From: Callorhinchus milii
Lineage: Eukaryota
Direction: 5' to 3'
NCBI RefSeq assembly: GCF_018977255.1
Contig: NW_024704751.1
Coordinates: 5,704,001-5,768,000, forward strand
Length of the DNA stretch: 64,000 nt
Position 1 is the stretch's first letter, and each line of letters starts with the position of its first letter. The translations under genes were made by a program, and so were the position numbers. This document shows, one piece after another, positions 14,957-31,407 of the stretch. The notes beneath the pieces were generated by a model. That model worked only from the letters and a program-made list of their open reading frames with translations. It was not told the DNA's origin and did not search any database.

Positions 14957-17782
14957 CTGAGAAACAAAAGGAATAATTGCCATTTTACATGAAATATTGG
15001 AGGGTTTAATTAACGTCTCTGACTATTTAGAGCCTGGCCTGCAACTGCCAGTTTGGAGGCCAAAAACAACCCAAAGGCACTGTTTTCCACCATCCATCAT
15101 CGCCTGCTCCGTGCACCCACCCCCTCCCCAAACTGCATCCATCCTCCTGCATGTCCCTCGCGCTCTCCGTTTCACCATCAGTGGCTGAGCTTTCAGCCAC
15201 TACGCCCCCAAACTCTAGAACACTCTTCCTCTATCCCTCCGCCTTACCACTTCCTTCCCCATCTTCAGATCCCACCTGAAGACCTTCCTTTTCGACTGTG
15301 CCTACGGTCACCTCCCCCTAGCTCAGTGTTGGGCTCCCCCACTGTCAAGCGCTGTGGGGCGCTATCCTGCGTGAGGGGCGCTACAGACATGAAAGTTGTT
15401 ATTGTTGATGGTGTTGTTGAGTCATTCCAATCTCCGCCTTCTGGAGCTCTTACCTCAATGATTCGTTGTCTCCGGGAAGCAATTGCAAAGATGATGGTGA
15501 TCAAGACCACCACTGACCCAGCAATGATGGGTTCGATTGGGGCTGGAATCACTTTATCTGCCAAAGAAAGAGAGTCATTCAGTGGTTTCGGGCCTTCAGC
15601 GACTTACTTACATAATAATAATAATAATAATAATAACCCTTGCATTTGACATAACACCTTATCACATTGTTGAGGCATCTCAAAGCACTTCACAGGAATA
15701 TACTGTAAAGTGAATTGACTGTCTATCTTGTGGGCGAAAATATACAGTATAAACCAATATATTTACATTGGTTAACACAGCCCGTACAGCACTGAAACAG
15801 GCTAATCGGCCTAACTAGTGCCTGTGTTTGTACTCCACGTGAGTCTCTACCCACTCTTTATTCCCTCCTATATCTTTCCAATCCCTTCTCCCTACCTAAA
15901 GCAATACTGTATATATTGATAATAGAGCGCTGGGGTTCACCAGATTACCATCTCTGTTTGACACAGTATCCATATTAATCCCTTTGCACGTACTGTGTGT
16001 GTTCAGAAACACGCTTAATAATAATCCTTGCATTCGATACAGCACCTTATCACGTCTTCGAGACGTCTCAAAGCGCTTCACAGAATATACTGTAAAGTGA
16101 ATTGACTGCATGTTTCGTGGGCGATGTACTTCGGGATAGATTTGAGGCAGGGGAACAATCATTTTCCGCTTGCTTTAGTGCAACCTTTCTTCGCTGTGAG
16201 CTTGCGTTCTTCATACCTCTTACGAGCAGATAGAAGTCCAACGCTTTGCTGCCAAGGGGGGAAATGGCCACACAGCTGTACGTCCCGTTGTCCGTCTTCA
16301 GCAACATCTTTATGGACAGTCTGAAGAGATTGCTGTCCAAGTTCACGCTGTGTCGGCCGCTCTCCAACTTCAGGGTCCTGTTGTCTTTGTACCAGACCAT
16401 GATTGCTTGCGGGTTGGACTTGGCGTTGCAGGTAAACGTTCGGTCAGTTTCCTCAGATGCATCAACGTAGACATCACTGTCTGCGCTCAGAATAGGAGCA
16501 ACTGGAAGAGGGTCAGATTCACAATTTCAATCACTGTGCACCGATGAAACTTTGTTAAATCGACCATTATGCTGATGTACGGCCACACATTTTACCTGTA
16601 AATGGGAAATTGCTGAACATATGCACCTCTGTTTTTTGGGGATTAACCCGGGTGTCTGACACGTGCGGAAACCCATCACTGTGCTTCAGAGTATCCCAAC
16701 CAAACTGAGAATTCCATCCAGACCACCTATTTTGTATTCAGAAGTGAGACACGGAAACCATATACATGTGTGTAGTCTGGCTCCCTGAAGGGGCTCAGGA
16801 CTTTCAGATAAAATCGGGGGTGAGGGGGTAAGGGGAGGGAGGTGTCAATTCGTGGGGGCGCCAAGTCGGGCATTACTTTTAACATTTTGTCCAAAGACGG
16901 TAACGTTTTGGGAATTAACGTTTCAAGCAAAGGACAGATTCTCCGACAATGACAGTGAGGTCAAACTCCCGGCGTGGAGCTTGAACCCAGAACTTTCTGA
17001 TTCTGGGGGCGAGAGAGAGAGAGAGAATACCACCAGTCTCAGTTACTTACATAAGATATCCAGAGCCACGGTGCTGTTGATGTTTTGCTTCCTCTTGAGA
17101 CGACAGCTAAACACAATCTGGTCGTCCTCCTCTTTGAGTGGATCGATGCAGACTGTACTTGTGTTGACTTCATTCAGGGAGCTCAACCTGACCTGACTCC
17201 TCCCTCGAAACCAGACCAGCTTTTCACTCTGCGTATTATTGACAGCTTTGCATTGCAGTGAAATCGAATCGGATATGTTTCTGGTGAGTTTCTGGGGTCC
17301 GTTGATGTTGTTTATAGTGATGTACACACCTGAGGCAAGGAAGAACAGGGCTATTGATCGATCAGCCACAAATTCATTGTTTGGACATAGCTCAATAAAT
17401 ATTGGCACAGATACCTTCAACCCAGGTTAACACGCGCTCAAATGAAATGCGTGCCTTTGTCAATTGTCTGAAATCCAGTAACACTCGCATAAGTCTGATC
17501 TCTATAAATCGTCTAATCGCCTAAGTCGTACACTTGCCTAAGTCCCGTTGAATTTCCTATGACATATGCAAATTTGACATAACTCATACCCTTGCATAAG
17601 TCATATTAAATGTATGGTCCCAACTGATACGACTTACGCGAGGTTTACTGTGTAACATCATTGTGCTCTATGACAAAAGTTGCTTAAGATATAAAATCCA
17701 TACCTGCACACCCGTGAATAAAACACAACACCGCAATCAGACTCAGTCCAACAATAATATTCCAAACCCTCTCCAGGAACAT
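14903..17782 (-). CDS. tmigd1: Transmembrane and immunoglobulin domain-containing protein 1, 266 aa; coding exons 17704-17782, 17051-17329, 16217-16501, 15454-15557, 14903-14956
   Basis: Signal peptide, two Ig domains, TM helix and short tail joined in frame by GT-AG introns; same-strand neighbour of blmh, as in other vertebrates. Confidence 0.88.
15040..15418 (+). mobile_element. L2-type LINE 3' fragment in a tmigd1 intron
   Basis: GCTTTCAGCCACTACGCCCC..CTCT.GAAC, CTGAAGACC..CCTTTTCGAC, tail AAGCGCT...GGGGCGCTA and (GTT)n. Confidence 0.75.
15454..15557 (-). CDS. tmigd1: tmigd1 transmembrane exon
   Basis: DKVIPAPIEPIIAGSVVVLITIIFAIASRRQRIIE. Confidence 0.9.
16217..16501 (-). CDS. tmigd1: tmigd1 Ig domain 2 exon
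   Basis: FAPILS...TFTCNAKSNPQAIMVWYKD...TDNGTYSCVAISPLG; 285 nt, phase 1/1. Confidence 0.92.
17051..17329 (-). CDS. tmigd1: tmigd1 Ig domain 1 exon
   Basis: SISLQCKAVNNTQSEKLVWFRG...STVCIDPLKEEDDQIVFSCRL; 279 nt, phase 1/1. Confidence 0.92.
17476..17650. mobile_element. Tc1/mariner (Tigger/pogo-like) MITE, 175 bp
   Basis: Terminal inverted repeats CAGTAACACTCGCATAAGTC and revcomp CAGTAAACCTCGCGTAAGTC (17/20); internal repeats of (C)TAAGTC. Confidence 0.75.
17704..17782 (-). CDS. tmigd1: tmigd1 signal-peptide exon
   Basis: MFLERVWNIIVGLSLIAVLCFIHGCA-G|GTATG, phase 1. Confidence 0.85.
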
Positions 17783-18121: not shown

Positions 18122-19147
18122 CTTCTCAGGCAGTGCAATGACACCGCCCTGAAGGTGATTTGGATTTGGTTTCATCCCCCAAATTCCCAATCGGTCGCTG
18201 ATGGTGAGACCCTTTTCAGCTGAAAATTTAAGATCGCGCCAGAAACGTGTGAAAAATCAGTCTTGATCCGGAAGAGGGTTTTACACAGAAACAAGAACTC
18301 GCATTTACACAGCGCTCTTCGTGTCGGATAATGTCTCCCAGCTGTGGTGGCTGTTGGTCGGATGTCGAGGGTAGAAGGGGGTAGGGAAGGGTAGGGTAGG
18401 TGATTGTAGGTGCGGTTGATGAGGTAGGTTTTAAGGTGGGATTTAAGGAGCGATAGAGAGAGGGGGTGAGGTAGAGGGATATAGAGGCAGGGATTTCCAG
18501 AGGTGGGAGGCAGAGTGAATAAAGGCTCAGCCAGTTTCTATAAGGAACCAGAGAACTTTGAACAGCCCCAACGATTTGGTTTGTACAGTGCCCTAAAGCA
18601 GGCCATTCGGCCCATCGTGTGTGTGCTGGCTCTTTGAAAGAGTGATCCATTCAGTCCATTTCTACCCGTTTCTTTCAAATGACTCCTGTTTAGATATCTA
18701 TCTCATTTCCCTCTTGAAAGCTAATATGAATCCTGCCTCGACCATCCCTCCTGGCGCTCCGAGGTCCTAAGTTTGTCAGAATCGAAGAGTTTTCGCTTCG
18801 CCCACAAAATATACAGTCAATTCACTTTATAGTGTATTCTGTGAGACGTCTCGAAGACGTGAAAAGTGCTATATCAAATGCAAGGTGTATTATTATTATT
18901 ATTATGAGCAGTGGTGAAGAGTCTCCAGCTGCGGGAGGTGTAATTCGGGTCTGGAGTTTCCTAGTGATGTCTGTGCAGGCACGAACCGAAAGAAAGGAGT
19001 GGTCATTACTCTCTTGGCATCTCATGACAAATTGTCAACCATAGTCCAAAGTATGCACTAAAAGTTAAATATTGAACCAAACCCGACTATAGAAATGCAT
19101 CTATAAGCACCAGAGCTTTCTCACCGCAATAGAGAACGATAGCCAGT

Positions 19148-19362
19148 ATGTGGGTGCGGGGGGCTGGGGGATTTGGGGGGTGCTGGGGATGTGGGGGTGG
19201 GGGATGTGGGTGCAGGGGGTTGGGGGATGTGGTGGGGGTGGGGGATGTGGGTGCGGGAGGCTGGGGGAGGTGGGGGGGGGTTGGGGGATGTAGGGGCTGG
19301 GGGAGGTGGGGGGCGGTGAGGGATGTGGGTGCGGGAGGCTGGGGGAGGTGGGGGTGGGTGGG
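19148..19362 (+). repeat. G-rich degenerate tandem repeat (GGGGGATGTGGGTGCGGGAGGCT-like units)
   Basis: Many GGG-or-longer runs with short linkers. Confidence 0.85.
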
Positions 19363-19883
19363 GTAGGATTGTCGGCCGGGACAACAGGCGAAACTCCTTT
19401 TCTCTTAAAATCTCAAAGTATATCATCAAGTGGATTGACTGCTGCGTTTCGCCCACAAAACATACAGCCAATCCACTTTACGATACATCCTGCGAGGTGC
19501 TTTGAGACGTCTCAACGACATAACGCATCAAACGCATGGACTAATATTATTAGCATTATTATTATTAATCATAAAAGATCCTGCTTTCAGAGTTAAAACT
19601 GAAGCATTTGCCTTTAGCACTGAAGCAAAGGCTTAAGTCTTAACCCCAACAGGGCTGTAAACTACAACCAGTTTCCAGGTTGTAACACAAAATCCTTTTG
19701 AAAGTGCTCAGCAAAAGCTTTGTTATGCAGTCTCTTTGGTGATTGTGAGGAAGGCTCAGTAAATGTGATCCTTTCCCTGGTGGTGGTGCTGTTCGACAGA
19801 GGGATTTAAAGCACATTTCAGAGTGATCTCCACTTCCTACTTCGTCAGAATCTCTGCGACACATCTGCAGCTTTTGAAGGCTA

Positions 19884-20180
19884 ATGGACAGCCCTGGAGA
19901 TGCCAACCAATGCCAGACCCTGGAACAGAGGAAAGACGGGGGTGACAACCTTTACTATCAACTGCACCTGGTCAAAATGGCCCACCTGCCCGCAGACATC
20001 CACAGGTTCTGTGACCCTCGGTTGGATCACACCAGGAGGAAGCAGCTGGTGCAAGAGCTGAGGAACCTGCAGACACTGAGCTGCCAGAAACTGCAGATCC
20101 TCTTCTCCTTCTCGGTCCCCAGCCCCAAGGCGATTGCCTTCATCGCCAATTTGAAGCGACCCTTGGTTTCAGCCGGGGCT
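19884..20180 (+). CDS. Methyltransferase-like gene coding exon 1
   Basis: ATG preceded by an in-frame TGA; ends ...FSFSVPSPKAIAFIANLKRPLVSAGA|GTGAGT. Confidence 0.82.
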
Positions 20181-22089
20181 GTGAGTGCTGCGAGCAGCTA
20201 AACTAGGGGCTAGGGTTAGTGATGCAGGGGGAGTGGGGCTGGCAATAGGGCTGTGTGTCTGTGTGTGGGGGGGGGGCTTGCAATAGGTTCATGTGTGTGT
20301 TGGGGGCTTAGCAAGAGGTCTGTGTGTGTGTGTGTGTGTTGTGTGAGGGGGCTTGAAATAGGTTTGTGTATGTTGTGGGGACTTGCAATAGTTCTGTGTG
20401 TGTGTGTTGGGGGGGTGCTTGCAATAGGTCTGTGTGTGTGTTGTGGGGATGGGGGGGGGGTCTTGCAATAGGTCTGTGTGTATGTGTTCGTTGTGGAGGG
20501 GCTTGCAATAAGTCTGTGTGTGTTGGTGGGGCTTGCAATAGGTCTGTGTGTGTGTTGTGTATGGGGGGGGCTTGCAATAAGTCTGTGTGCGTGTGTTGTG
20601 ATGGGGGGGTCTTGCAATAGGTCTGTGTATGTGTTGTGATGGGGGGTCTTGCAATAGGTTTGTGTGTGTGTTGTGGTGGGGGCTTGCAATAAGTCTGTGT
20701 GTGTGTTGTGATGGGGGGGCTTGCAATAGGTCTGTGTGTGTGTTGTGGGGATGGGGGTGGGGTCTTGCAATAGGTCTGTGTGTATGTGTTTGTTGTGGAG
20801 GGGCTTGCAATAAGTCTGTGTGTGTTGGGGGGGCTTGCAATAGGTCTGTATGTGTGTGTTATGTATGGGGGGGGCTTGCAATAGGTTTGTGTGTGTGTGT
20901 TATGTATGGGGGGGGCTTGCAATAGGTTTGTGTGTGTGTGTTGTGTATGGGGTGGGGGGCTTGCAATAGGTTTGTGTGTGTGCGTGTTGCGGAGGGGCTT
21001 GCAATAAGTCTGTGTGTATGTTGTGTTGGTGGGGCTTGCAATAGGTCTGTGTGTCGTCTGAATCTCGTGCCCTTCATGCCAGATAGCCTTAACGTCTTGC
21101 TTGTCGATCTTCCCTTTTTGCAGGGAACTGGATACTGGGAGTACCTGCTGCAAAGCCGAGGAATAGATGTGGTGGTGTTCGATACCAATACAGTTTATCC
21201 ACCCGAAATGCGATACTTAGATATCCAGGTACGTAGCAAAATGTTAACACAACAGCAGTGACCAGGGCAACGATTTATGAATGAGTGAATAATAATAATG
21301 ATGATGATGATGATGATGATAATAATAATAAGCCTTGCATTTGATTTAGCGCCTTATCACGTCGTCGAGAACGTCTCAATAGGAGCCTCACAGAATAGAT
21401 TGTGAAGTGAATTGACTGCGCATCCTGTGGGCGAGTCGCGGCAGTCAATGGCAGTGATTGCGTGTGCTTGTGTGTTTGTTTATGTGTGAAGTTAATGCAG
21501 ACTTCATTTTTTTTAGAAGTCCTAAACAATGTGTGGATGCTAAAACATTTTTTTTTAATGGCTTTAGACCAGTGGGACTGAAATCCTGGAAACATTTGCT
21601 GACCGAGTGCTTTTATTGGCCTGGCCCGATGTGGATGGTAAGTGAGGGAGGGCTACTTCGCATTTATATAGCGCCTTTCGCCCGTGGTAGTGGCTTGGAG
21701 CGCTAAAAACTGCTAAGGTATTTTTTCTCTCTCTCTCTGCGTGTTGAAAAAGTTGAAGGAGTTTAACGAGCCCCATGTTTATTGCTGTGGTTTCAGAATC
21801 TTCCACCTTCTCTCTGGACTGCCTGAGCTGTTACCAGGGGGACACGGTGCTTCACGTGGGGGAGTTAATGGGGGAAACTCTGTCCGCTAATACGTGGGGG
21901 CAGTCATCGTCCCGTGCCTTTCAGCTGGCTCTGGCGGAGGACTTCTGCTGCGTCAGCAGAGTTCAGCTTCCAAACTGGCCGGGACACTTGGACTCTCTAA
22001 CCATGTGGAGAAGAAAGAGCGCTCAGCCAGTGGTGTGCGATGGAGCACATTTTCACTACGTCGACACCGACTGCAGAGAGTATTTGTGA
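19884..22089 (+). CDS. Uncharacterised class I SAM-dependent methyltransferase-like protein, 254 aa; coding exons 19884-20180, 21124-21228, 21568-21637, 21797-22089
   Basis: Four GT-AG exons splice in frame (phases 0,0,1); the exon 1/2 junction creates LVSAGA|GTGYW (motif I, GxGxG), followed by GIDVVVFD (acidic residue at the end of beta2), VLLLAWP, YQGDTVLHVGE and LPNWP..DSLTMW. Confidence 0.85.
20236..21055 (+). repeat. Minisatellite of about 22 units, 30-44 bp each, core G(n)CTTGCAATA(G/A)GTCTGTGTG, in coding intron 1 of the methyltransferase-like gene
   Basis: Cores counted by eye; linkers are (TG)n and G runs. Confidence 0.93.
21124..21228 (+). CDS. Methyltransferase-like gene exon 2
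   Basis: CCCTTTTTGCAG|GTGYWEYLLQSRGIDVVVFDTNTVYPPEMRYLDIQ|GTACGT. Confidence 0.87.
21568..21637 (+). CDS. Methyltransferase-like gene exon 3
   Basis: TTTAG|TSGTEILETFADRVLLLAWPDVD-G|GTAAGT. Confidence 0.85.
21797..22089 (+). CDS. Methyltransferase-like gene exon 4
   Basis: TTTCAG|ESSTFSLDCLSCYQGDTVLHVGE...WGQSSSRAFQLALAEDF...LPNWPGHLDSLTMWRRK...EYL*. Confidence 0.87.
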
Positions 22090-22470
22090 TGCGGGAAAGC
22101 CAGCCACTCATTGCCAGCTCTCTCTCTCTCTGTTTCTTGTGAGCAATATACCCATCAACCAGTGTCTGGTCTCTGAACTCCACACACTGACAGCCAGCTT
22201 CGATGTTCTGAACTCTCCACCCCCACCCCCCACCAACTCTCAACCCCCTGCTTTGACCACTCTTTCAGCCATCTTTCCTCACCATTGCTGAGTACTTTGA
22301 GACGTTCCTCCCGAGGTGAAAGGCGCTGTGTAAGTGTGAATCGTACAACCTGTAACCAATTGGGTGCAGCTGTAGGTGTTGGGCAGCCAAAGACCAAGGG
22401 CCAAGGCAGCCTTGGCACCAGAATGAGTGTGTACAAATGCGCTAAGACGAGAGGATCGATTTTAAGACCT

Positions 22471-22476
22471 TTTATT
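22471..22476 (-). terminator. cryba1 polyadenylation signal
   Basis: AATAAA on minus about 165 nt after the stop. Confidence 0.65.
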
Positions 22477-22639
22477 TCAAGATTTCAAGACCTCCGTCCA
22501 TTGAAGCGAGGTGTTAAATAGGGTCGCGGCACCACAGGTGAGAGATAGCAGATTCTGCAACAGTATGGAGTGCCGCGTATGACCGTAGGCTTTAACACCG
22601 GGGTCTTTCTGATGATCAGTCGTCTTGTTGGTGAAACGC

Positions 22640-22787
22640 TTATTGCTGAATGCGACGGAGGGACTGAATCTGGAAGGTCTGGGCGTGGGATCCCCATTCT
22701 CTCCAGTGCTTGTACTCTCCACCATGACGGTCACACTCCATGATGTACTGGAAGCCACGGTATCCTGGGTACTGGTAGCAAACCCAT
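22640..22787 (-). CDS. cryba1: cryba1 exon 6
   Basis: [48 protein letters not shown]. Confidence 0.95.
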
Positions 22788-24977
22788 CTGGGGTGAGGAA
22801 TGAGACAACTGTTTATGAGGCGAAATTGAAATTGCTGGTTTCAGACAGAAGCGATCAATTACTGTTACTGCACTAGTTTGATTCCCCACATATGGCTTTT
22901 GTTATGTTATAAGTCAAATTCCATAGGTTGAGGTTAATAACATTCTTCCTATCCTACCCACCGCCACCCCCTATCCCCCCACCAACCCCAACCAAGCGCC
23001 TCACCCCCAAAACCACCACCACCGATCTGGAAAATATAGAATCATAGAATCCTGCAGGACAGAAGGAGGCCATTTGGCCCATCATGCCTGTGCTGGCTCT
23101 TTGAAGGAACCAATTAGTCCCACTCCCCTGCTCTTTCCCCATAGCCTTGGAGTGTTTCTCCTTTTCAATTTTATACCCAATACCCCTTTTGAAAGTTATT
23201 ATTCAATCTGCTTCCACCACCCTTTCAGGCCGTGTCTTTCCAGATGATTGGATTCACTCCAAAGCTTTGCTCTTTGCACGATCCCTTGTGTTGATGACTT
23301 TGCCCAACTTACGCTCCAGCCTGAATCTTCATGGATCCAACCTCGTTGTTGCACCAGCCCATGGCTTGCAGAGAAGGATAATCGTCACACATCTCCCACT
23401 GCCTGCCGATGAAGTTCTCCTTCTCAAAAATAACGATTTTGGACTCCTTATGGTTCTGAAAGGGTGGGGGGGGGAGAGAAGAACCGATCAAAACGTTCGA
23501 ATTCTGTCCTCGTACAGAGTATGGCACCACACAACTCACATTAATCAGGCACCTTTCACAGCGGGAGAAAGTCTCCGTGACTTAGGTCTGAGTCCGCAAA
23601 AAAGCAGGTGAGAAAAGCACGAGAAATGCAGTTTGTGAATTATCATAGTTTAAATTCTCCCCCCTTTCCCCCCTTCCCCTCCCCCTCCCACCCGGCCATT
23701 GGCATAAGTTGTCCAGTGCTGGTCTTAAAATTACGTGTGAAGCTGACAGTGTCTCCCTGTGTTAGTGAAACTCACGGCAGAGCAGATGGGGCGGAAGGAC
23801 ATCATTCTCTCGGTGTGGTAAGCATTGCTGCCGCTCCAGGCGTCCCAGCGGGGGTACTCTCCTTTCTCCAGGATGAATTGTTGTCCACAGAAGCTGGAGT
23901 GCTCGTAACCGGCCCATCTACGATCGAGACCATTCAACCATTCAACCACAACAACAACAAATTACATTTGTAATGCGCCTTTCACATCAGGAGGACGTCC
24001 CAAGGCGCTGGACAGTCAGGGAATCGGAGCTACTACATCGCCTTGAAGGAATTTCTGCTCCGAGCACGGATTCCTACGCTAATTTTGAGAATCCCAGCTG
24101 GCGGGGAGCTATCTGCACTCCATTCCAGCCCATAGCTGACTCCCAAGTAAAGTGACCCTTTACTCAGGAGGCCATCTCAAAGCTCCTCACAAGATTTACG
24201 GTAAAGTGCAGCGACTGCATTTTTTGTGGGACCTAACGACTTGAATTATTATGGGGTGGGGGTCACTGAAAACATGCACTGTAGTACCGCAAAGGGGTCG
24301 TCAGTCCGTACAACTGTTGCCTCGTTAGAGTTGAAAATCTTTTAGAAAGTGACCTTTTTCCCCCCCCCCCCCCCAATAAAAGTTGCTAAAAACAGAATGG
24401 CTTCAAATTGGATAAAGCACCTCATCCAGTTCTGCCTGATGAGAAGTTCAAAGTCAATTTATATCACAATTGATTCGTAGAAAAATTACAAAGTTTTTTT
24501 TGGATGATATAATTTGTAAATGGATTTTGCTGTCTTTTTTTTAAAAAAAAGCACTTTGCTCATACCATCAATAAATCCAATGTATTTGGTTTTGCATAAA
24601 AGCCCAAACAAGTTTAATTAACAGGGTGAAATGGTCATGGCTGTTTCGAAGGAAAAGTTGTCGCAGAAGTGTTTTTTGTAAAGTGTAAAAGTTTTTTTTT
24701 TTGACTCACGCTCCACAGTCGATTTTGAGAGATCTGACATTGTCAAAACCACAGTCCATGATGTTCTTGCAGGACGTGGTGAATTCCATCCTCTTGCCCT
24801 GGAAGTTTTCTTGATCGTAAACGGTGATCTGCGGTAGAGATATTTTTCGTGAGATTTCAATGAAGATTAGGAATATATATATTAAAAAAAAATCTTAATT
24901 TCTGCCGCGGTTAGGGTGATACCTCTTCTCGTTGTATTTATTACCTTGTAAAGTCCGGCTGGGTTTGTCTGTGCCAT
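22640..24977 (-). CDS. cryba1: Beta-crystallin A1 (betaA3/A1 gene), 194 aa; coding exons 24945-24977, 24710-24828, 23776-23917, 23313-23455, 22640-22787
   Basis: Four Greek-key exons of 119/142/143/148 nt; MAQTNP start; ends [18 protein letters not shown]; divergent from myo18a as in mammals. Confidence 0.93.
23036..23235 (-). mobile_element. CR1-type LINE 3' terminus in cryba1 intron 5
   Basis: ATCATAGAATC...GAAGGAGGCCATTTGGCCC (revcomp of a CR1 tail). Confidence 0.75.
23313..23455 (-). CDS. cryba1: cryba1 exon 5
   Basis: [47 protein letters not shown]. Confidence 0.95.
23776..23917 (-). CDS. cryba1: cryba1 exon 4
   Basis: [47 protein letters not shown]. Confidence 0.95.
24710..24828 (-). 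CDS. cryba1: cryba1 exon 3
   Basis: [39 protein letters not shown]. Confidence 0.95.
24945..24977 (-). CDS. cryba1: cryba1 exon 2 coding part (exon begins at 25002)
   Basis: [11 protein letters not shown]|GTAAT. Confidence 0.9.
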
Positions 24978-25196
24978 GATTGCTGTTAATTATGTCCTTT
25001 TTCTGTTGGAGTGAACACATAAACATGAAATGTTGGCTCTCAAACAGCTCACAGTATCTGCCCAACTTTTGACACACAAAGTCTTATTACCGCACTTGGA
25101 AAACTTACTAAATACTGTGCGATCGCGTACGTTAAGCTGAATTGGCAATCATTTAAATTGAATTTAACGAAAACATTCAGCGAACACAGGTCTTAC

Positions 25197-27820: not shown

Positions 27821-27976
27821 GTGAGAAACTGGAACGCTTCCAAAGCGACCGAATTCACCACTTTGACTGTGTGAAATGTTGTGTTGCGTATAGCAGGTGA
27901 ATGAAATGTTATTCGGGATCGATCAAAAGCCAAATGAACCGCTCCTGTCTTTATTATTGTTTCAGCAGTTGCCAAA

Positions 27977-28042
27977 ATGTCTCACAGTGGAACTCAGGGT
28001 AGCATTGGAAGCCATTCTGCTTCAGGTCTTCGCAGCAACCGG
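27977..28042 (+). CDS. crybb1l: crybb1-like exon 2 coding part
   Basis: [22 protein letters not shown]|GTAGGT. Confidence 0.85.
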
Positions 28043-31000
28043 GTAGGTAAACTCTGTGGACAATGTTGTTTAGTACTGTAAGGGGCAGGGAGCAGCTAAC
28101 AGCAGAGCAGCGGGTATATCAGCAGTAAGTGAAAGATCCTCTGTGCTATACTTCAGAGTGCAATCTTAGGTGGTTAGTCCCAGCTCTTTGGGACGTCCTC
28201 CCGACGTGAAAGGCGCTGTACAAATGTAATTTTGTACTGTATTGTATCAATCGAGTATATGTTTCGCATCCAATGCTGATGGTAATTTGGAAGCTGCTCG
28301 ATTGATTGCCCATTTCACTCACCTGATGTTTTTTTTCCTTTAGTTATTTGACTTGTGGTTTGTTGTGCTGTAACTTGCGCTGAATTTGCAGCATTGGTTT
28401 GTGCGAGTCAATAACTGGGAGGTGAACCCCAATTCGCAAAGTGCGTGAACTTTAATGTAGTGGCGAGGAACGTAGAGGGTTGAAGCTCGCTTGAGGGTCA
28501 CTCTGAACCGAGCCCCACGCAGACCAGTGATCGAAAGTCATACCTTTCTGGTCTGCGGGTCTCAGTACCAGATCGGGCAGCGACTGAGTCTCTGTTCAGC
28601 CGGGTGTGTGAGGCATGCGGAAACCAACCATCGTGCTTAAGGGTATCCAATCCAACCCAAGCTTCCATGCATCCCACCTGCACATGGAAACTCCAACTGA
28701 GTCATTGCAGAATTTTTGAGAGAACACATCGCATACGGTCTAGGATTCCGAATCATTGGCACGGAGCAGTAATAGCCTCCACGCTTTCCCGGTATCGCTT
28801 TCGCCCACAGAATACACAGTCAATTCACTTTATAATGATACTAACAATGATGATCCTTGCATTTGATGTAGCGCCTTATCACGTCGTCGAGACGCCTCAA
28901 AGCGCGTCACAGAATATACTGTAAAGTGAAGTATATTTTGTGGGCGGAACGCGACAGCAGCGTCCCACAAGTAGTCGTGGATTGAAGTGACCAATTTATT
29001 ATTCTTATTTTAATTGAAGGAGTTAATCATTTACAGACTTTACAGTAGTCTGTTCTGTGAAGCGCTTTGAGTCGTCTCGAAGACATGATAAGGGAGCTAT
29101 ATCAAATGCAATGATTATTTTATTATTATTATTTATTATTATTATTACGTATTATCGTGGCTGAGGTTGAATCCTTCCTCCTTTTGCGCTCAGATCATCA
29201 TCTACGAGTACGAGAACTTCCAGGGTCGCCGGGTGGACTTCAACTCGGAGTGCAAGAATATCTGTGACCGGGGATTTGAGAGAGTCGGGTCAATCCGGGT
29301 TGAATGTGGACCGTAAGTGCTCCTCTGTTTAATCCCCTGAGCGCTCATCTACGGTACGGCCACTTGCTTGTTCTTTTTTTTCCGACCTATTCCGTGGACA
29401 AACGAGTTAAGATGCAGTTTTTATTTTTAATCCGTGGTGGGGTCACCAGGACTCACATTGCGCTACTTGAAAAGAGACGAGAGCTTCTCCTGGGGTCCCG
29501 GCCAATAATTCCTCCACCCCACCCCCCAAACCCCAACCCCAAACCCTCCCCCCGCAAATCAGCTCTCTCACTTTGTGGCTGTTTGCGGGACATCGCTGTG
29601 AACGCAAATCGGCTGACATGTTCGCCTGTAAAATACACAGTCGCGACACTTTACAGTAAAATGGGAAGCGCTGTGAGATTCGTATATCACGTGAGAGGAT
29701 TGTTGTGATTATTATTAATCGTTCTTTTTAATGTGGGGAAAAAAAAGACGTAATCGCAGACAGAGGCCAAACCTTGATTCCATTGTGACTGTTTTGCTTT
29801 GCAGATGGGTGGCTTACGAGCAGCAGAACTTCAGTGGTGAGATGTTCATGCTGGAGAAGGGAGAATACCCTCGCTGGGACTCCTGGTCTAACAGCTATCG
29901 CACTGACCGTCTGATGTGTTTCCGCCCCGTCAAAATGGTAAACGGCAACCTAGGAACAGGAGGAGGCCATTCAGCCCACTGAGGCTGTTCCACCAGTCCA
30001 TTCGATTTCGGCCAGAATCCCAGTGCCATCGCTCTTTCTCCCTCAGCGATTAATTGCCAGTGACTTTCTGTCACCTTTTAAGACAGTGAAAATGTGGAAT
30101 GTGCTCAGTTTTTGCGTGAATATTGTGGGCTGAGGAAATTGTTGTTATTGTAAATACTGCATTGTCTTAAATGCCATTTAACGAACATAATTTATAATAC
30201 CCTCAATTATAGGATATTTATTAATGATAGTACATGACAGTACACTGGTATAATTATAGTATATTACAGTCTACTATAGTATAATCACTGTATATCCTGT
30301 GAAGCGCTTTGAGACGTCTCAATGACGTGATGACGAGCTGCATCAAATGCAAGGATTATTATTATTATTACAGGACGGCCAGGACCACAAGATTTGTCTG
30401 CACGAATGTGCCAACTTCGAAGGGAGAAAGATGGAGATCAGTGATGAGGACATCCCCAGTCTCTGGGCTTATGGTTTCCAGGACAGAGTTGCCAGCATTA
30501 AAGTAGCAGGAGGAACGTAAGTCACCTCGCTTTCCTCCCACAGGAGACTCGTAGAGAAAACGTACGGTCTTTTGTTTAGGGTTGCAAAGGGCAATTTCAA
30601 GGCAGACGCCAGGAAGTGTTTCTTTACACAAACAGGCAATTAACGCCTGGAACAAGTTACCATTTGGAGCACAGGTTGTCAGAATATTCACAGTGTATCC
30701 TGTGAAGCGCTTTGAGATGTCTCGAAGGCATGAATTAAGGCGCTGTATCAATGCAAGGGTTATTATTAATATTATCCTATATTCATATAGAAAGGATGGT
30801 TGAGGCCAGGATGTTGGGCAATGAAAGCAAACGAAGGGCCGAAGGGTCTTTTTCATCCGAACTGATCTTGCGATGCGCAGTTGTGCTAACCTGCCTGAGC
30901 TGAGATACTATCTGAACGCATGCTGGCTTCTCCATCAGCAACACATAAATCAGCTCTTTTGTTTTTGCATCCAGCAATGTTTCCATGTACGCAAGTGCGC

Positions 31001-31407
31001 GTGGCACCATGTACACAAGTGTGCGTGGCACTGTGCGCAAAGCCATACAGTTATAGCGAATCGTTATATTTTGTTCAGCGCTTAAAAAAAACACACGGGC
31101 AACATCGGGCCGTTGATCTGTGAATCAAGCGCTCGGGGATGCTACCCTGCCTGAGGGGCGCTGTATAAAATGTAAGCTGCCCCGCTTGTTCTTGTCGAAT
31201 AGCCTTGTGGTTGATGTATACTCACGCTTCTGTTTCTGCAGATGGGTCGGCTACGAGTACCCAGGTTACAGGGGATACCAGTATGTGTTGGAGTGCGGAA
31301 TGTACAAGCACTGGAACGAATGGGGCGCCCAACAGCCTTTGATCCAGTCCATGCGACGTGTGAAGGACCAGCAATGGTACAAACGAGGCTGCTTTGAGTT
31401 TAACTAA
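27977..31407 (+). CDS. crybb1l: Basic beta-crystallin, betaB1-like (crybb1l type), 208 aa; coding exons 27977-28042, 29194-29312, 29805-29937, 30374-30516, 31242-31407
   Basis: Greek-key exons of 119/133/143 nt typical of betaB genes; [19 protein letters not shown]; C-terminal arm [17 protein letters not shown]; short N-arm [15 protein letters not shown] like fish crybb1-like genes (recalled). Confidence 0.88.
28598..28695 (+). repeat. Dispersed repeat, homologous to 5281-5381 (-) and 16647-16720 (+)
   Basis: Shared CCGG.TGT.TGA..C..GCGGAAACC...TGCTT.AG.GT.TCC.A..CAAC motif order in three copies. Confidence 0.7.
29194..29312 (+). CDS. crybb1l: crybb1-like exon 3
   Basis: [40 protein letters not shown]. 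Confidence 0.95.
29805..29937 (+). CDS. crybb1l: crybb1-like exon 4
   Basis: [44 protein letters not shown]. Confidence 0.95.
30374..30516 (+). CDS. crybb1l: crybb1-like exon 5
   Basis: [48 protein letters not shown]. Confidence 0.95.
31242..31407 (+). CDS. crybb1l: crybb1-like exon 6
   Basis: [54 protein letters not shown]. Confidence 0.95.

What the first reader, a model, noticed from the sequence alone, without database searches (positions are those of the whole stretch)
19884..22089. Orphan spliced SAM-dependent methyltransferase-like gene between tmigd1 and cryba1
Seen: four exons with canonical splice sites give an intact 254-aa protein that the ORF track shows only as unrelated fragments. 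The GxGxG SAM-binding motif (VSAGA|GTGYW) forms only after splicing across a 943-nt intron that is mostly minisatellite. Knowledge: motif I plus an acidic residue ending beta2 (DVVVFD) is the class I Rossmann MTase signature. The full motif set (FSVPSPKAIAFI, GAGTGYW, LLLAWP, Y.GD.V.HVGE, WG.S...FQ..L...F, LP.WP..D.L..W.R) does not match any named mammalian MTase I know; from memory it resembles hypothetical proteins of protists, fungi and bacteria. Inference: either an ancient enzyme lost in mammals or a horizontally acquired, intronised gene, with unknown substrate.
Basis: partly seen in the sequence, partly recalled or inferred. Interest (0 to 1): 0.85.

Follow-up and report, generated by a model that had tools for sequence, protein, structure and literature searches.

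The report
Expressed uncharacterised methyltransferase-fold gene, not orphan
This is a real, spliced and transcribed four-exon gene for a small methyltransferase-shaped protein of unknown substrate, belonging to an old animal gene family that sharks, lungfish and amphibians kept but that was not found in mammals.

Summary
Exons 19884-20180, 21124-21228, 21568-21637 and 21797-22089 (+) have GT..AG introns and code for 99+35+23+1+96 = 254 aa. Intron 1 (943 nt) is 85% minisatellite and splits the GxG|xG motif. Contigs of three cDNA-like runs carry all three predicted joints; a genomic-like run has none.

The gene is not an orphan. Each exon matches, in order and at the same borders, 'uncharacterized protein LOC...' entries of sharks, rays, coelacanth, lungfish, amphibians, amphioxus, hemichordates, corals, Trichoplax and choanoflagellates. 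More distant relatives occur in oomycetes, diatoms, actinobacteria and archaeal or jumbo phages. The tree follows the species tree, and the exon-2 borders are shared with a coral. This supports vertical descent, not recent horizontal transfer. No amniote or teleost appears among the named hits.

No Pfam model reaches its threshold. A confident model of a shark orthologue (pLDDT 92.5) has a class I SAM-methyltransferase fold. The substrate is unknown.

In Callorhinchus, RefSeq merges exons 2-3 into a beta-crystallin model.

The joined window protein was never built or searched.

The parts
19800..19883 (+). 5' untranslated part of exon 1 (minimum extent)
   Evidence: Spliced contigs of runs X3, X2 and X1 begin at 19800, 19811 and 19848. 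An in-frame TGA lies at 19875, before the ATG at 19884.
19884..20180 (+). Exon 1 coding part: 99 aa, N-terminal helical region up to the first half of motif I (VSAGA)
   Evidence: Translation. It is 59-66% identical to residues 1-100 of shark orthologues. The joint 20180/21124 is present in X1-X3.
20181..21123 (+). Intron 1: 943 nt, GT..AG, phase 0. The minisatellite at 20257-21054 makes up 85% of it.
21124..21228 (+). Exon 2: 35 aa, second half of motif I (GTGYW), helix A, and beta2 ending in the invariant Asp (VVVFD)
   Evidence: Translation. It is 76% identical to shark orthologues. The same 35-aa unit is skipped in predicted X2 isoforms of a shark, a ray, a horn shark, a newt, a toad and a coral.
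21229..21567 (+). Intron 2: 339 nt, GT..AG. It contains a high-copy repeat and a microsatellite.
   Evidence: The joint is reported as 21226/21566 (cut +2) in X1-X3. Splice sites are shown. Summed contig depth runs into the thousands at 21264-21471.
21568..21637 (+). Exon 3: 23 codons plus 1 nt, holding beta4 and the invariant WPD (LLLAWPDVD)
   Evidence: Translation. It is 78% identical to orthologues. Invariant P155 and D156 are kept.
21638..21796 (+). Intron 3: 159 nt, GT..AG, phase 1
   Evidence: The joint is reported as 21636/21796 (cut +1) in X1-X3. Splice sites are shown.
21797..22089 (+). Exon 4 coding part: 2 nt plus 96 codons plus TGA. It holds the HVGE, WGQS, FQxxL, LPNWPG and DSLTMWRR motifs, that is beta5 to beta7 plus a small C-terminal hairpin.
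   Evidence: Translation. It is 77-82% identical to shark and ray orthologues. The phmmer best E is 5e-41. All 12 invariant family residues that fall in this exon are kept.
22090..22700 (+). 3' untranslated region (minimum). The contigs run on beyond the laid stretch, so the true 3' end is not determined.
   Evidence: X1-X3 contigs are continuous from 21796 to 22700, with 186-388 further letters beyond. No plus-strand AATAAA or ATTAAA lies between 22090 and 24374. The stretch overlaps the last exon of a minus-strand crystallin gene, so the contigs may merge two convergent transcripts.

Best explanation
This is a genuine, transcribed, vertically inherited single-copy gene of a cartilaginous fish; the window matches Callorhinchus milii. 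It encodes a soluble protein of about 254 aa with a class I (Rossmann-type) S-adenosylmethionine-dependent methyltransferase fold.

Shown: the four exons are spliced exactly as predicted. Each exon is orthologous to 'uncharacterized protein' genes of other non-amniote vertebrates and of invertebrates. A confident structure model of the nearest full-length orthologue superposes on solved SAM methyltransferases.

Inferred mechanism:
- The N-terminal ~90 residues form a helical cap.
- The strand ending in GAGTG-YW (motif I, split by intron 1) and the invariant Asp at the end of beta2 bind the methionine and ribose parts of SAM.
- The methyl acceptor sits in a pocket lined by family-invariant residues at the C-terminal ends of beta4 (W-P-D156), of beta5 (H178-x-G-E181) and of the following loop (W192-G193).
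- Asp, His and Glu at these positions point to general-base or metal-assisted methyl transfer, as in catechol-O-methyltransferase-type enzymes. The acceptor is most likely a small molecule. It is unknown.

The family has no Pfam model and no characterised member. It appears to have been lost in amniotes and ray-finned fishes.
For: Gene and expression:
- Per-exon translations and splice sites are clean.
- Contigs of X1, X2 and X3 (one study) each carry the joints 20180/21124, 21228/21568 and 21637/21797.
- X5 has none of these joints, and its contigs run from exons into introns (19600-20234, 20966-21282, 21388-22371). The joined form is therefore not present as DNA in that run.

Orthology:
- Exon 4 alone gives 360 clusters at E<=1e-3, 71 at <=1e-10 and 6 at <=1e-30.
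- The per-exon BLASTP borders fall at residues 100/101, 135/136 and 158/160 of the shark proteins.
- 62 hits with a frog query and 133 with the family profile are all named 'uncharacterized' or 'hypothetical', or carry automatic methyltransferase names.
- The window's pieces keep 17 of 17 invariant and 21 of 22 near-invariant family residues.

Vertical descent:
- In the tree of 35 rows, vertebrates are supported at 99/99, chondrichthyans plus the window's exon 4 at 100/98, amphibians at 95/97, and holozoans against oomycetes at 97/94.
- A 35-aa exon-2 unit is missing from predicted isoforms in 6 of 7 pairs examined, including a coral.

Fold:
- The AlphaFold2 model of shark P0179, made with a 36-row alignment, has pLDDT 92.5 and pTM 0.90.
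- Foldseek gives 394 PDB hits at E<=1e-3. The top hits are SAM methyltransferases (TcaB9/KijD1, E 2e-6).
- VIA-align against 48,161 chains gives top-50 Z scores of 9.4-11.2. 33 of the 50 titles say methyltransferase or methylase, and no title names another fold.
- In the second look, COMT entries fill the first 10 rows (Z 12.1, rmsd 3.2, 167 residues aligned, model residues 11-233).

Sequence:
- Sub-threshold Methyltransf_23 matches at motif I occur in 13 of 36 members.
- The best PDB profile hit aligns motif I and beta2 with methyltransferase 2avn (E 0.061).

Within-species variants in coding sequence: two are synonymous, and one is Leu>Phe, which gives the residue the orthologues commonly carry at that position.
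Against: - No curated model is reached. 0 of 36 members reach a Pfam gathering score, NCBIfam gives nothing for the eukaryotic members, and the PDB sequence profile gives no hit below E 0.06.
- The fold match is a plateau of many methyltransferase families within about 1 Z unit, so no subfamily or substrate can be assigned.
- The structure is that of an orthologue. By rule, the window's joined product was not modelled.
- I had no access to model coordinates. The placement of D156, H178 and E181 near the methyl donor is inferred from their position after beta4 and beta5, not measured.
- The bacterial and viral relatives lack these three residues, so they may do something else.
- The window's product has Thr at a Pro that is at least 90% conserved (P139).
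- The runs are only guessed to be RNA, and all three come from one study.
- No dN/dS could be computed.
- SAM binding and catalysis are untested.
Confidence: 0.72

Rival explanations
1. It folds like a methyltransferase but no longer transfers methyl groups. It could be a pseudoenzyme, a SAM sensor, or an enzyme of another SAM-dependent or SAM-independent reaction.
For: No curated methyltransferase model is reached. The top structural rows include CbiT 'decarboxylase' entries. The helix usually found between beta2 and beta3 is replaced by a loop in the model.
Against: The three motif I glycines are at least 90% conserved and the beta2 Asp is invariant across 36 members from choanoflagellates to amphibians. 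Such conservation is expected if the cofactor site is in use. Further invariant polar residues lie where class I enzymes place catalytic residues.
Confidence: 0.17
2. The exons are really 5' exons of the downstream beta-crystallin gene, as the RefSeq models have it, and the stand-alone 254-aa product is minor or an artefact.
For: RefSeq models of Callorhinchus (P0233, P0241), Carcharodon, Rhincodon, Cetorhinus, Amblyraja, S. torazame and Narcine join exons 1-3 or 2-3 to crystallin exons. P0233 maps at 93-100% identity to 21076-21231, 21568-21636 and 27959-31404 of the window.
Against: Contigs of three runs join exon 3 to exon 4 and run on into the 3' UTR. Exon 4 is the best-conserved part of the family. 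Stand-alone orthologues exist in animals from corals to frogs. The chimera would end the fold after beta4. The laid stretch ended at 22700, so a read-through joint could not have been seen.
Confidence: 0.05
3. A horizontally acquired gene (bacterial, viral or protist donor) that later gained introns.
For: Distant relatives occur in actinobacterial MAGs and Nocardia, in haloarchaeal viruses and in a jumbo coliphage. The ESM Atlas lists a bacterial/phage cluster at 0.96.
Against: The tree is congruent with animal phylogeny, and bacterial-like rows sit on a 1.9-substitution branch outside all eukaryotes. Exon-2 borders are shared between vertebrates and a coral. The gene sits in a region with SERT about 25 kb before the window (an unchecked note) and with crystallin neighbours that are also present in the shark and ray models.
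Confidence: 0.03
4. A decaying pseudogene that happens to keep an open frame.
For: It is absent as a stand-alone protein from the listed hits for this species. It has one substitution at a near-invariant Pro.
Against: The frame is intact over 254 codons. 17 of 17 invariant residues are kept. Exon 4 is 77-82% identical to sharks and rays. All splice sites are canonical. Spliced transcripts are present.
Confidence: 0.03

Closest known systems
'Uncharacterized protein LOC...' orthologues of non-amniote vertebrates and invertebrates, e.g. Scyliorhinus canicula LOC119974936, Pristiophorus japonicus UPI00398EDB9C, Latimeria LOC102352863, Xenopus tropicalis LOC100495598, Nematostella LOC116603372
   Same: Same length (about 250-260 aa), same exon borders, same invariant residues, and 59-82% identity per exon to the sharks.
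   Different: Nothing of substance; this is the same gene. In Callorhinchus it was not found as a stand-alone entry. Exons 2-3 appear only inside a 'beta-crystallin B3 isoform X1' model.
Class I SAM-dependent methyltransferases; structurally nearest are catechol O-methyltransferase (1jr4 and other COMT entries), precorrin-6y methyltransferase 3e05, MeT1 6g80 and TcaB9/KijD1
   Same: Rossmann-type sheet with a helical N-terminal cap. GxGxG follows beta1 and an acidic residue ends beta2. Z scores are 11-12 over 155-175 residues.
   Different: Identity is 10-15%. No Pfam methyltransferase model reaches its threshold, and no Methyltransf_3 hit was seen at all. There is a loop instead of a helix between beta2 and beta3. 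The family has its own invariant set: YW after motif I, WPD, HxGE, WG and LPxWP. COMT leads other families by under 1 Z unit, which counts as a tie.
PHROG family phrog_19090 (unknown function): Natrialba virus PhiCh1 ORF83, Halobacterium virus phiH1_425, Halogranum virus HGTV-1 gp67, Escherichia phage Goslar gp111
   Same: A significant profile match covers motif I to the C-terminus in 6 of 6 family members tested (E 5e-11 to 4e-22). The same N-terminal 'YAFAI..AL' element and the GAGTGYW / D / WP motifs are seen in the bacterial-like P0218. In tblastn against phages, P0218 finds these viral proteins at 28-41% identity.
   Different: The viral proteins are about 190-225 aa. The bacterial-like P0218 and P0219 lack the eukaryotic D156, H178 and E181 and carry a Cys-rich insert; the viral proteins themselves were not aligned. 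The viral genes sit next to DNA cytosine methyltransferase genes in PhiCh1 and phiH1 (PMC6210493 table, passages seen). No function is known.

Membership tests
Class I SAM-dependent methyltransferase superfamily | Rossmann-like alpha/beta fold (sheet order 3-2-1-4-5-7-6) that superposes on solved members | tested here: met
   Tested on the shark orthologue P0179, not on the window's joined product. The model has pLDDT 92.5. Foldseek gives 394 hits at E<=1e-3, with methyltransferases on top. VIA-align gives Z 9.4-12.1. Strand order itself was not inspected, because no coordinates were available.
Class I SAM-dependent methyltransferase superfamily | Motif I, a glycine-rich loop (GxGxG) after beta1 | tested here: met
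   The window has VSAGA|GTGYW across the exon 1/2 border. G99, G101 and G103 are at least 90% conserved in 36 members and are kept in the window.
Class I SAM-dependent methyltransferase superfamily | Acidic residue at the C-terminal end of beta2 (ribose hydroxyl contact) | tested here: met
   D120 is invariant in 36 members. Strand 116-120 of the model ends on it. The window has VVVFD in exon 2.
Class I SAM-dependent methyltransferase superfamily | Match to a curated methyltransferase sequence model at its threshold | tested here: not met
   The window's exons give 0 hits in Pfam and NCBIfam. 0 of 36 family members reach a gathering score. 13 of 36 have a sub-threshold Methyltransf_23 match (best E 0.0088).
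Class I SAM-dependent methyltransferase superfamily | Binds SAM and transfers its methyl group | not testable with these tools
   This needs purified protein.
Catechol-O-methyltransferase-like, cation-dependent O-methyltransferases | Closest structural neighbours, clearly above other methyltransferase families | tested here: inconclusive
   COMT entries take ranks 1-10 in the second look (Z up to 12.1), but the next family is at Z 11.4. In the representative search the COMT fusion 7ud6 ties at 10.8 with several other families.
Catechol-O-methyltransferase-like, cation-dependent O-methyltransferases | Sequence membership (Pfam Methyltransf_3; the family name is recalled) | tested here: not met
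   No such family appears among the matches at E<=0.1 for any of the 36 members.
Catechol-O-methyltransferase-like, cation-dependent O-methyltransferases | Metal-binding acidic or amide residues after beta4 and beta5 (Asp/Asp/Asn in COMT, recalled) | tested here: inconclusive
   Invariant D156 follows beta4, and H178 and E181 lie at the end of beta5. The spatial arrangement could not be checked without coordinates.
phrog_19090 / bacterial-viral relatives | Significant match to the family profile | tested here: met
   6 of 6 members tested match, with E 5.5e-11 to 3.9e-22 over profile positions about 33-191 of 191. The window's own exons were not scanned against PHROGs.
Taxonomically restricted ('orphan') or horizontally acquired gene | No homologues in related lineages, or a phylogeny that conflicts with the species tree | tested here: not met
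   Orthologues were found in at least 9 animal groups. The tree is congruent with the species tree. Intron positions are shared.

The most novel reading that the evidence does not exclude
The eukaryotic branch of this family is a distinct, so far undescribed type of methyltransferase. Its invariant Asp-His-Glu set (D156/H178/E181), absent from the bacterial and viral relatives, would form a metal or general-base site for methylating a small molecule. It has been kept from choanoflagellates through corals, amphioxus, sharks, lungfish and amphibians, that is in water-living or water-breeding lineages, and lost independently in amniotes and ray-finned fishes. That pattern would point to a metabolite or xenobiotic tied to that way of life. 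In cartilaginous fishes its first exons may also feed a read-through transcript into the neighbouring lens crystallin gene.
Probability: 0.2. Interest if true: 0.6.

Novelty: new member of a known kind. Interest (0 to 1): 0.4.

Why it matters
The finding corrects an annotation. In the elephant shark the gene seems to exist in the databases only as two exons merged into a crystallin model, while transcript contigs show a stand-alone four-exon mRNA.

More broadly, it flags a well-conserved methyltransferase-fold family that has no Pfam model, no characterised member and no paper found. Xenopus and axolotl carry it, so a knock-out and a biochemical substrate screen are directly feasible.

The patchy retention (non-amniote sarcopterygians and chondrichthyans yes; amniotes and teleosts not found) makes it a clean case for studying gene loss at the water-to-land transition. 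It is not a new kind of system, and such uncharacterised conserved families are not rare.

Tried and rejected
Steps that led nowhere:
- Pfam and NCBIfam on the four exon translations gave nothing.
- Pfam on ten long homologues, looking for informative fusions, gave only SET+Rubisco-LSMT in one metagenomic protein, SDE2+SPRY in another, and sub-threshold Methyltransf_23 in two. These are single cases, possibly merged gene models, so no conclusion was drawn.
- The PDB sequence profile had a best E of 0.061.
- Bacterial gene neighbourhoods were inconsistent. In Nocardia L011 the neighbours are an AAA_21 ATPase and a GntR regulator. In Ilumatobacteraceae L003 they are a GPR1/FUN34/YaaH-family protein and an epimerase. 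No functional clue came from this.
- Rfam on 19000-25000 gave no family.
- A poly(A) signal scan found no plus-strand AATAAA or ATTAAA between 22090 and 24374, so the 3' end is left open.
- Paper searches for six LOC identifiers, six accessions or phrog_19090, six locus tags and 'lost in amniotes'+methyltransferase+coelacanth found 0 papers. The only exception is PMC6210493, whose table lists the viral homologue as uncharacterised (passages seen).
- Of the earlier findings of this scan, one note on SERT upstream was used for synteny only. Two crystallin notes on other pieces were not used.

Not done:
- The exon-2-skipped isoform and the crystallin read-through were not seen in the laid contigs. 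Contigs drop rare forms and the laid stretch ended at 22700, so this is no evidence of absence.

Tree rows: I used 34 proteins chosen because a source names their organism (plus two bacterial-like metagenome proteins as outgroup) and the window's exon 4 alone. All unnamed metagenome hits and all isoform or chimeric rows were left out.
Full report
**1. The observation**

- Exon 1 (19884-20180) gives 99 aa ending in VSAGA.
- Exon 2 (21124-21228) gives 35 aa beginning GTGYW.
- Exon 3 (21568-21637) gives 23 codons plus one base.
- Exon 4 (21797-22089) gives two bases, 96 codons and TGA.

The count is 99+35+23+1+96 = 254 residues. The introns are 943, 339 and 159 nt. Their donors are GTGAGT, GTACGT and GTAAGT, and each has an AG acceptor after a pyrimidine tract. 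An in-frame TGA at 19875 precedes the ATG. There is no N in the region.

Tandem Repeats Finder reports one array at 20257-21054 (periods about 30-41, with a higher-order period of 302). It makes up 85% of intron 1. The ORF list shows the gene only as separate ORFs.

I did not build, search or fold the joined protein.

**2. Expression**

The look-up of sequencing runs found eight holders of 21100-22300, all from one organism. Three (X1-X3, one study) are guessed to be RNA and hold 0.40-0.54 of the sampled words. By my arithmetic the exons plus 3' UTR make up about 0.57 of that stretch.

I laid the runs on 19600-22700. Each of X1, X2 and X3 has one contig carrying the joints 20180/21124, 21226/21566 (cut +2, that is 21228/21568) and 21636/21796 (cut +1, that is 21637/21797). 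All are GT..AG.

X5 has none of these joints, and its contigs cross exon-intron borders (19600-20234, 20966-21282, 21388-22371). So X5 behaves as genomic DNA, and the joined form is not a DNA retrocopy in it.

The spliced contigs start at 19800-19848 and run past 22700. The caveats are that the RNA label is a guess, that the three runs are one study, and that contigs give no strand or level.

Three differences fall in coding sequence. 21615 A>C is present in all four runs and changes Leu to Phe, the residue the orthologues commonly carry at that position. 21888 and 22056 are synonymous.

**3. Relatives**

A phmmer search with exon 4 alone (96 aa) against 1.84 billion representatives gave 360 proteins at E<=1e-3, 71 at <=1e-10 and 6 at <=1e-30. 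The full-length hit P0002 (256 aa) is an 'uncharacterized protein' of the frog Rhinophrynus.

With P0002 as query, 62 proteins were found. With a 36-row family alignment as query, 133 were found, of which 120 were listed.

Named rows cover these groups:
- frogs, a caecilian and salamanders;
- Latimeria and Protopterus;
- sharks and rays (Pristiophorus, Chiloscyllium, Scyliorhinus, Heterodontus, Hemiscyllium, Rhinoraja);
- Saccoglossus and Ptychodera;
- Branchiostoma;
- corals, Nematostella and Trichoplax;
- choanoflagellates;
- more distantly, oomycetes and diatoms.

All are 'uncharacterized' or 'hypothetical', or carry automatic 'methyltransferase' names from UniRef. No amniote, teleost, lamprey, tunicate, echinoderm, protostome, fungus or plant name was among the listed rows. 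This is absence from a word-seeded search, not proof of loss.

Per-exon BLASTP of the window against these proteins gives 59-66% identity for exon 1, 76% for exon 2, 78% for exon 3 and 77-82% for exon 4 against chondrichthyans. The borders fall at residues 100/101, 135/136 and 158/160 of the shark proteins.

The window's pieces keep 17 of 17 invariant and 21 of 22 near-invariant family residues. The exception is Thr for P139.

**4. Which genome, and its annotation**

A member of a crystallin cluster, 'beta-crystallin B3 isoform X1 [Callorhinchus milii]' (P0233, XP_007898975.2), maps to the window at 93-100% identity. It covers 21076-21231 (the tail of intron 1 plus exon 2), 21568-21636 (exon 3), and crystallin exons at 27959-28045, 29191-29313, 29806-29937, 30386-30517 and 31243-31404.

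I therefore take the window for Callorhinchus milii or a very close relative. That RefSeq model is a chimera of this gene with the downstream crystallin.

Equivalent chimeras, which use exons 1-3 where I checked (Carcharodon and Amblyraja), are predicted in Carcharodon, Rhincodon, Cetorhinus, Amblyraja, S. torazame and Narcine. No stand-alone Callorhinchus protein appeared among the hits. That is the only sense in which the gene is 'orphan'.

**5. Descent**

I built a maximum-likelihood tree of 34 named proteins plus the window's exon 4. The support values are:
- vertebrates 99/99;
- chondrichthyans with the window 100/98;
- amphibians 95/97;
- hemichordates, amphioxus and choanoflagellates each monophyletic;
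- all holozoans against oomycetes 97/94.

The bacterial-like outgroup sits on a branch of 1.9 substitutions per site. Relations among the animal phyla are unresolved, and the choanoflagellate branches are long.

In 6 of 7 isoform pairs, the predicted short isoform lacks exactly the 35 residues that correspond to exon 2. The pairs are three chondrichthyans, a newt, a toad and the coral Stylophora against Pocillopora. So the two introns flanking exon 2, including the one that splits GxG|xG, appear to predate the cnidarian-bilaterian split. The seventh pair (Ranitomeya) lacks a different 17 aa.

This supports vertical inheritance. It speaks against recent horizontal acquisition with later intron gain.

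**6. What the protein is**

No Pfam or NCBIfam model is reached by the exons or by full-length relatives. 13 of 36 members give sub-threshold Methyltransf_23 matches confined to motif I and beta2 (best E 0.0088, against a cut-off of 27 bits).

A profile search of PDB sequences gives at best E 0.061. That hit also aligns motif I and beta2, with methyltransferase 2avn.

AlphaFold2 on the shark orthologue P0179 with the 36-row alignment gives pLDDT 92.5 and pTM 0.90. The model has five N-terminal helices, then strands at 95-98, 116-120, 149-153, 175-180, 208-215 and 225-231 with helices between them, and a short C-terminal hairpin.

The structure searches gave these results:
- Foldseek against the PDB returns 394 hits at E<=1e-3. 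All those I read in the first 49 ranks are SAM methyltransferases, except 3fpg (MtNAS), whose title names no methyltransferase. The best are TcaB9 and KijD1 (E 2e-6, TM 0.41 on the query).
- VIA-align against 48,161 representatives gives 204 chains at Z>=8 and top-50 Z scores of 9.4-11.2. 33 of the 50 titles say methyltransferase or methylase. The rest are gene symbols, CbiT or unnamed proteins.
- The second look at Foldseek's 1000 best puts catechol O-methyltransferase entries in the first ten ranks (Z 12.1, rmsd 3.2, 167 aligned, model 11-233, so the N-terminal helices are included). The next family is at 11.4, which counts as a tie.

So the fold is established for the family. No subfamily is established.

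**7. Mechanism (inference)**

These family-invariant residues sit at the places where class I enzymes bind SAM and their substrate:
- G99-x-G101-x-G103-Y104-W105 after beta1;
- D120 at the end of beta2;
- W154-P155-D156 after beta4;
- H178-x-G180-E181 at the end of beta5;
- W192-G193 in the next loop;
- LPxWP and D224 before beta7.

The bacterial-like relatives keep the SAM-side motifs but not D156, H178 or E181. I read the eukaryotic protein as an active SAM methyltransferase whose Asp/His/Glu set acts as a base or a metal site, most likely on a small molecule. I could not inspect coordinates, so this placement is by secondary-structure position only. The comparison with COMT's metal ligands is recalled, not tested.

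**8. Distant relatives**

All six family members tested match PHROG phrog_19090 (unknown function) at E 5e-11 to 4e-22.

In tblastn against phages, the bacterial-like P0218 finds 12 records. These are HGTV-1 gp67, PhiCh1 ORF83 and phiH1_425, coliphage Goslar gp111 and one uncultured phage, some of them present as duplicate records.

In PhiCh1 the gene directly follows a putative N4-cytosine DNA methyltransferase and lies near a C5 one. The phiH1 paper's table lists it as uncharacterised (PMC6210493, passages seen).

A genome scan found 12 bacterial loci, mostly actinobacterial MAGs and Nocardia. Their neighbours are not consistent. The ESM Atlas gave oomycete clusters and a bacterial/phage cluster as nearest neighbours. 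These are leads only.

**9. Surroundings**

Three beta/gamma-crystallin exons lie on the minus strand directly downstream, at about 24831-24688, 23916-23785 and 22786-22643. An exon for the third motif was not found. The C-terminus resembles betaA1/A3-crystallin as I recall it. A minus-strand AATAAA lies at 22471-22476.

This gene is convergent with the methyltransferase-like gene and overlaps the stretch that the spliced contigs cover.

Upstream, an Ig-domain exon lies on the minus strand at 17046-17420. That fits tmigd1 but does not prove it.

**10. Verdict**

The gene is real, expressed and methyltransferase-fold, with no characterised counterpart, and it is ancient and not found in mammals. 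It is neither an orphan nor horizontally acquired.

It is a new member (and, for this species, an annotation fix) of an already predicted but unstudied family within a well-known superfamily.

I found no paper on the family.

Noticed in passing
window 21076-21636 with 27959-31404 (+): RefSeq 'beta-crystallin B3 isoform X1' of Callorhinchus is a chimera. It joins an ATG in the tail of intron 1, exon 2 and exon 3 of this gene to the five coding exons of the downstream beta-crystallin. Similar chimeras are predicted in at least six other cartilaginous fishes; the two I mapped onto the window (Carcharodon, Amblyraja) use exons 1-3. Whether this is a real read-through transcript or a modelling artefact is open.
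   Followed up: partly
window 22643-24831 (-): A second beta/gamma-crystallin gene lies convergent to and overlapping the 3' UTR stretch of the methyltransferase-like gene. Exons for Greek-key motifs 1, 2 and 4 were found; motif 3 was not found by tblastn. A minus-strand AATAAA lies at 22471-22476. Its C-terminus looks like betaA1/A3-crystallin (recalled).
   Followed up: partly
window 21615: The reference has A (Leu, LLLAWPD), but contigs of all four runs have C (Phe, LFLAWPD), the residue the orthologues commonly carry. This is a private allele or an assembly error.
   Followed up: yes
window 21577-21579: The window's product has Thr where at least 90% of 36 family members have Pro (P139, in the 'GGPE' turn after beta3). 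No variant was reported there in the runs.
   Followed up: partly
window 21264-21471 and 22304-22407: Summed contig depth jumps to hundreds or thousands here, with many short contigs ending at 21337-21370 and 21388-21418. These are interspersed high-copy repeats in intron 2 and in the 3' UTR.
   Followed up: no
window 19863: One X3 contig fits only from 19863 onward and carries 93 unrelated letters before it. There is no AG directly upstream. It may be an alternative 5' exon or a chimeric contig.
   Followed up: no
window 17046-17420 (-): An ORF with an immunoglobulin domain (Pfam ig, E 2e-5).
   Followed up: partly
L001 3905-4480 (Natrialba virus PhiCh1 ORF83): The viral relative overlaps the stop of a putative N4-cytosine DNA methyltransferase gene and lies two genes from a C5-cytosine methyltransferase. 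The order is the same in phiH1. This hints at a nucleic-acid modification module for the viral branch.
   Followed up: partly
P0058 (metagenome protein, 810 aa): A family domain sits at the C-terminus behind a SET domain and a Rubisco-LSMT substrate-binding domain. It may be a fusion with a protein lysine methyltransferase or a merged gene model.
   Followed up: no
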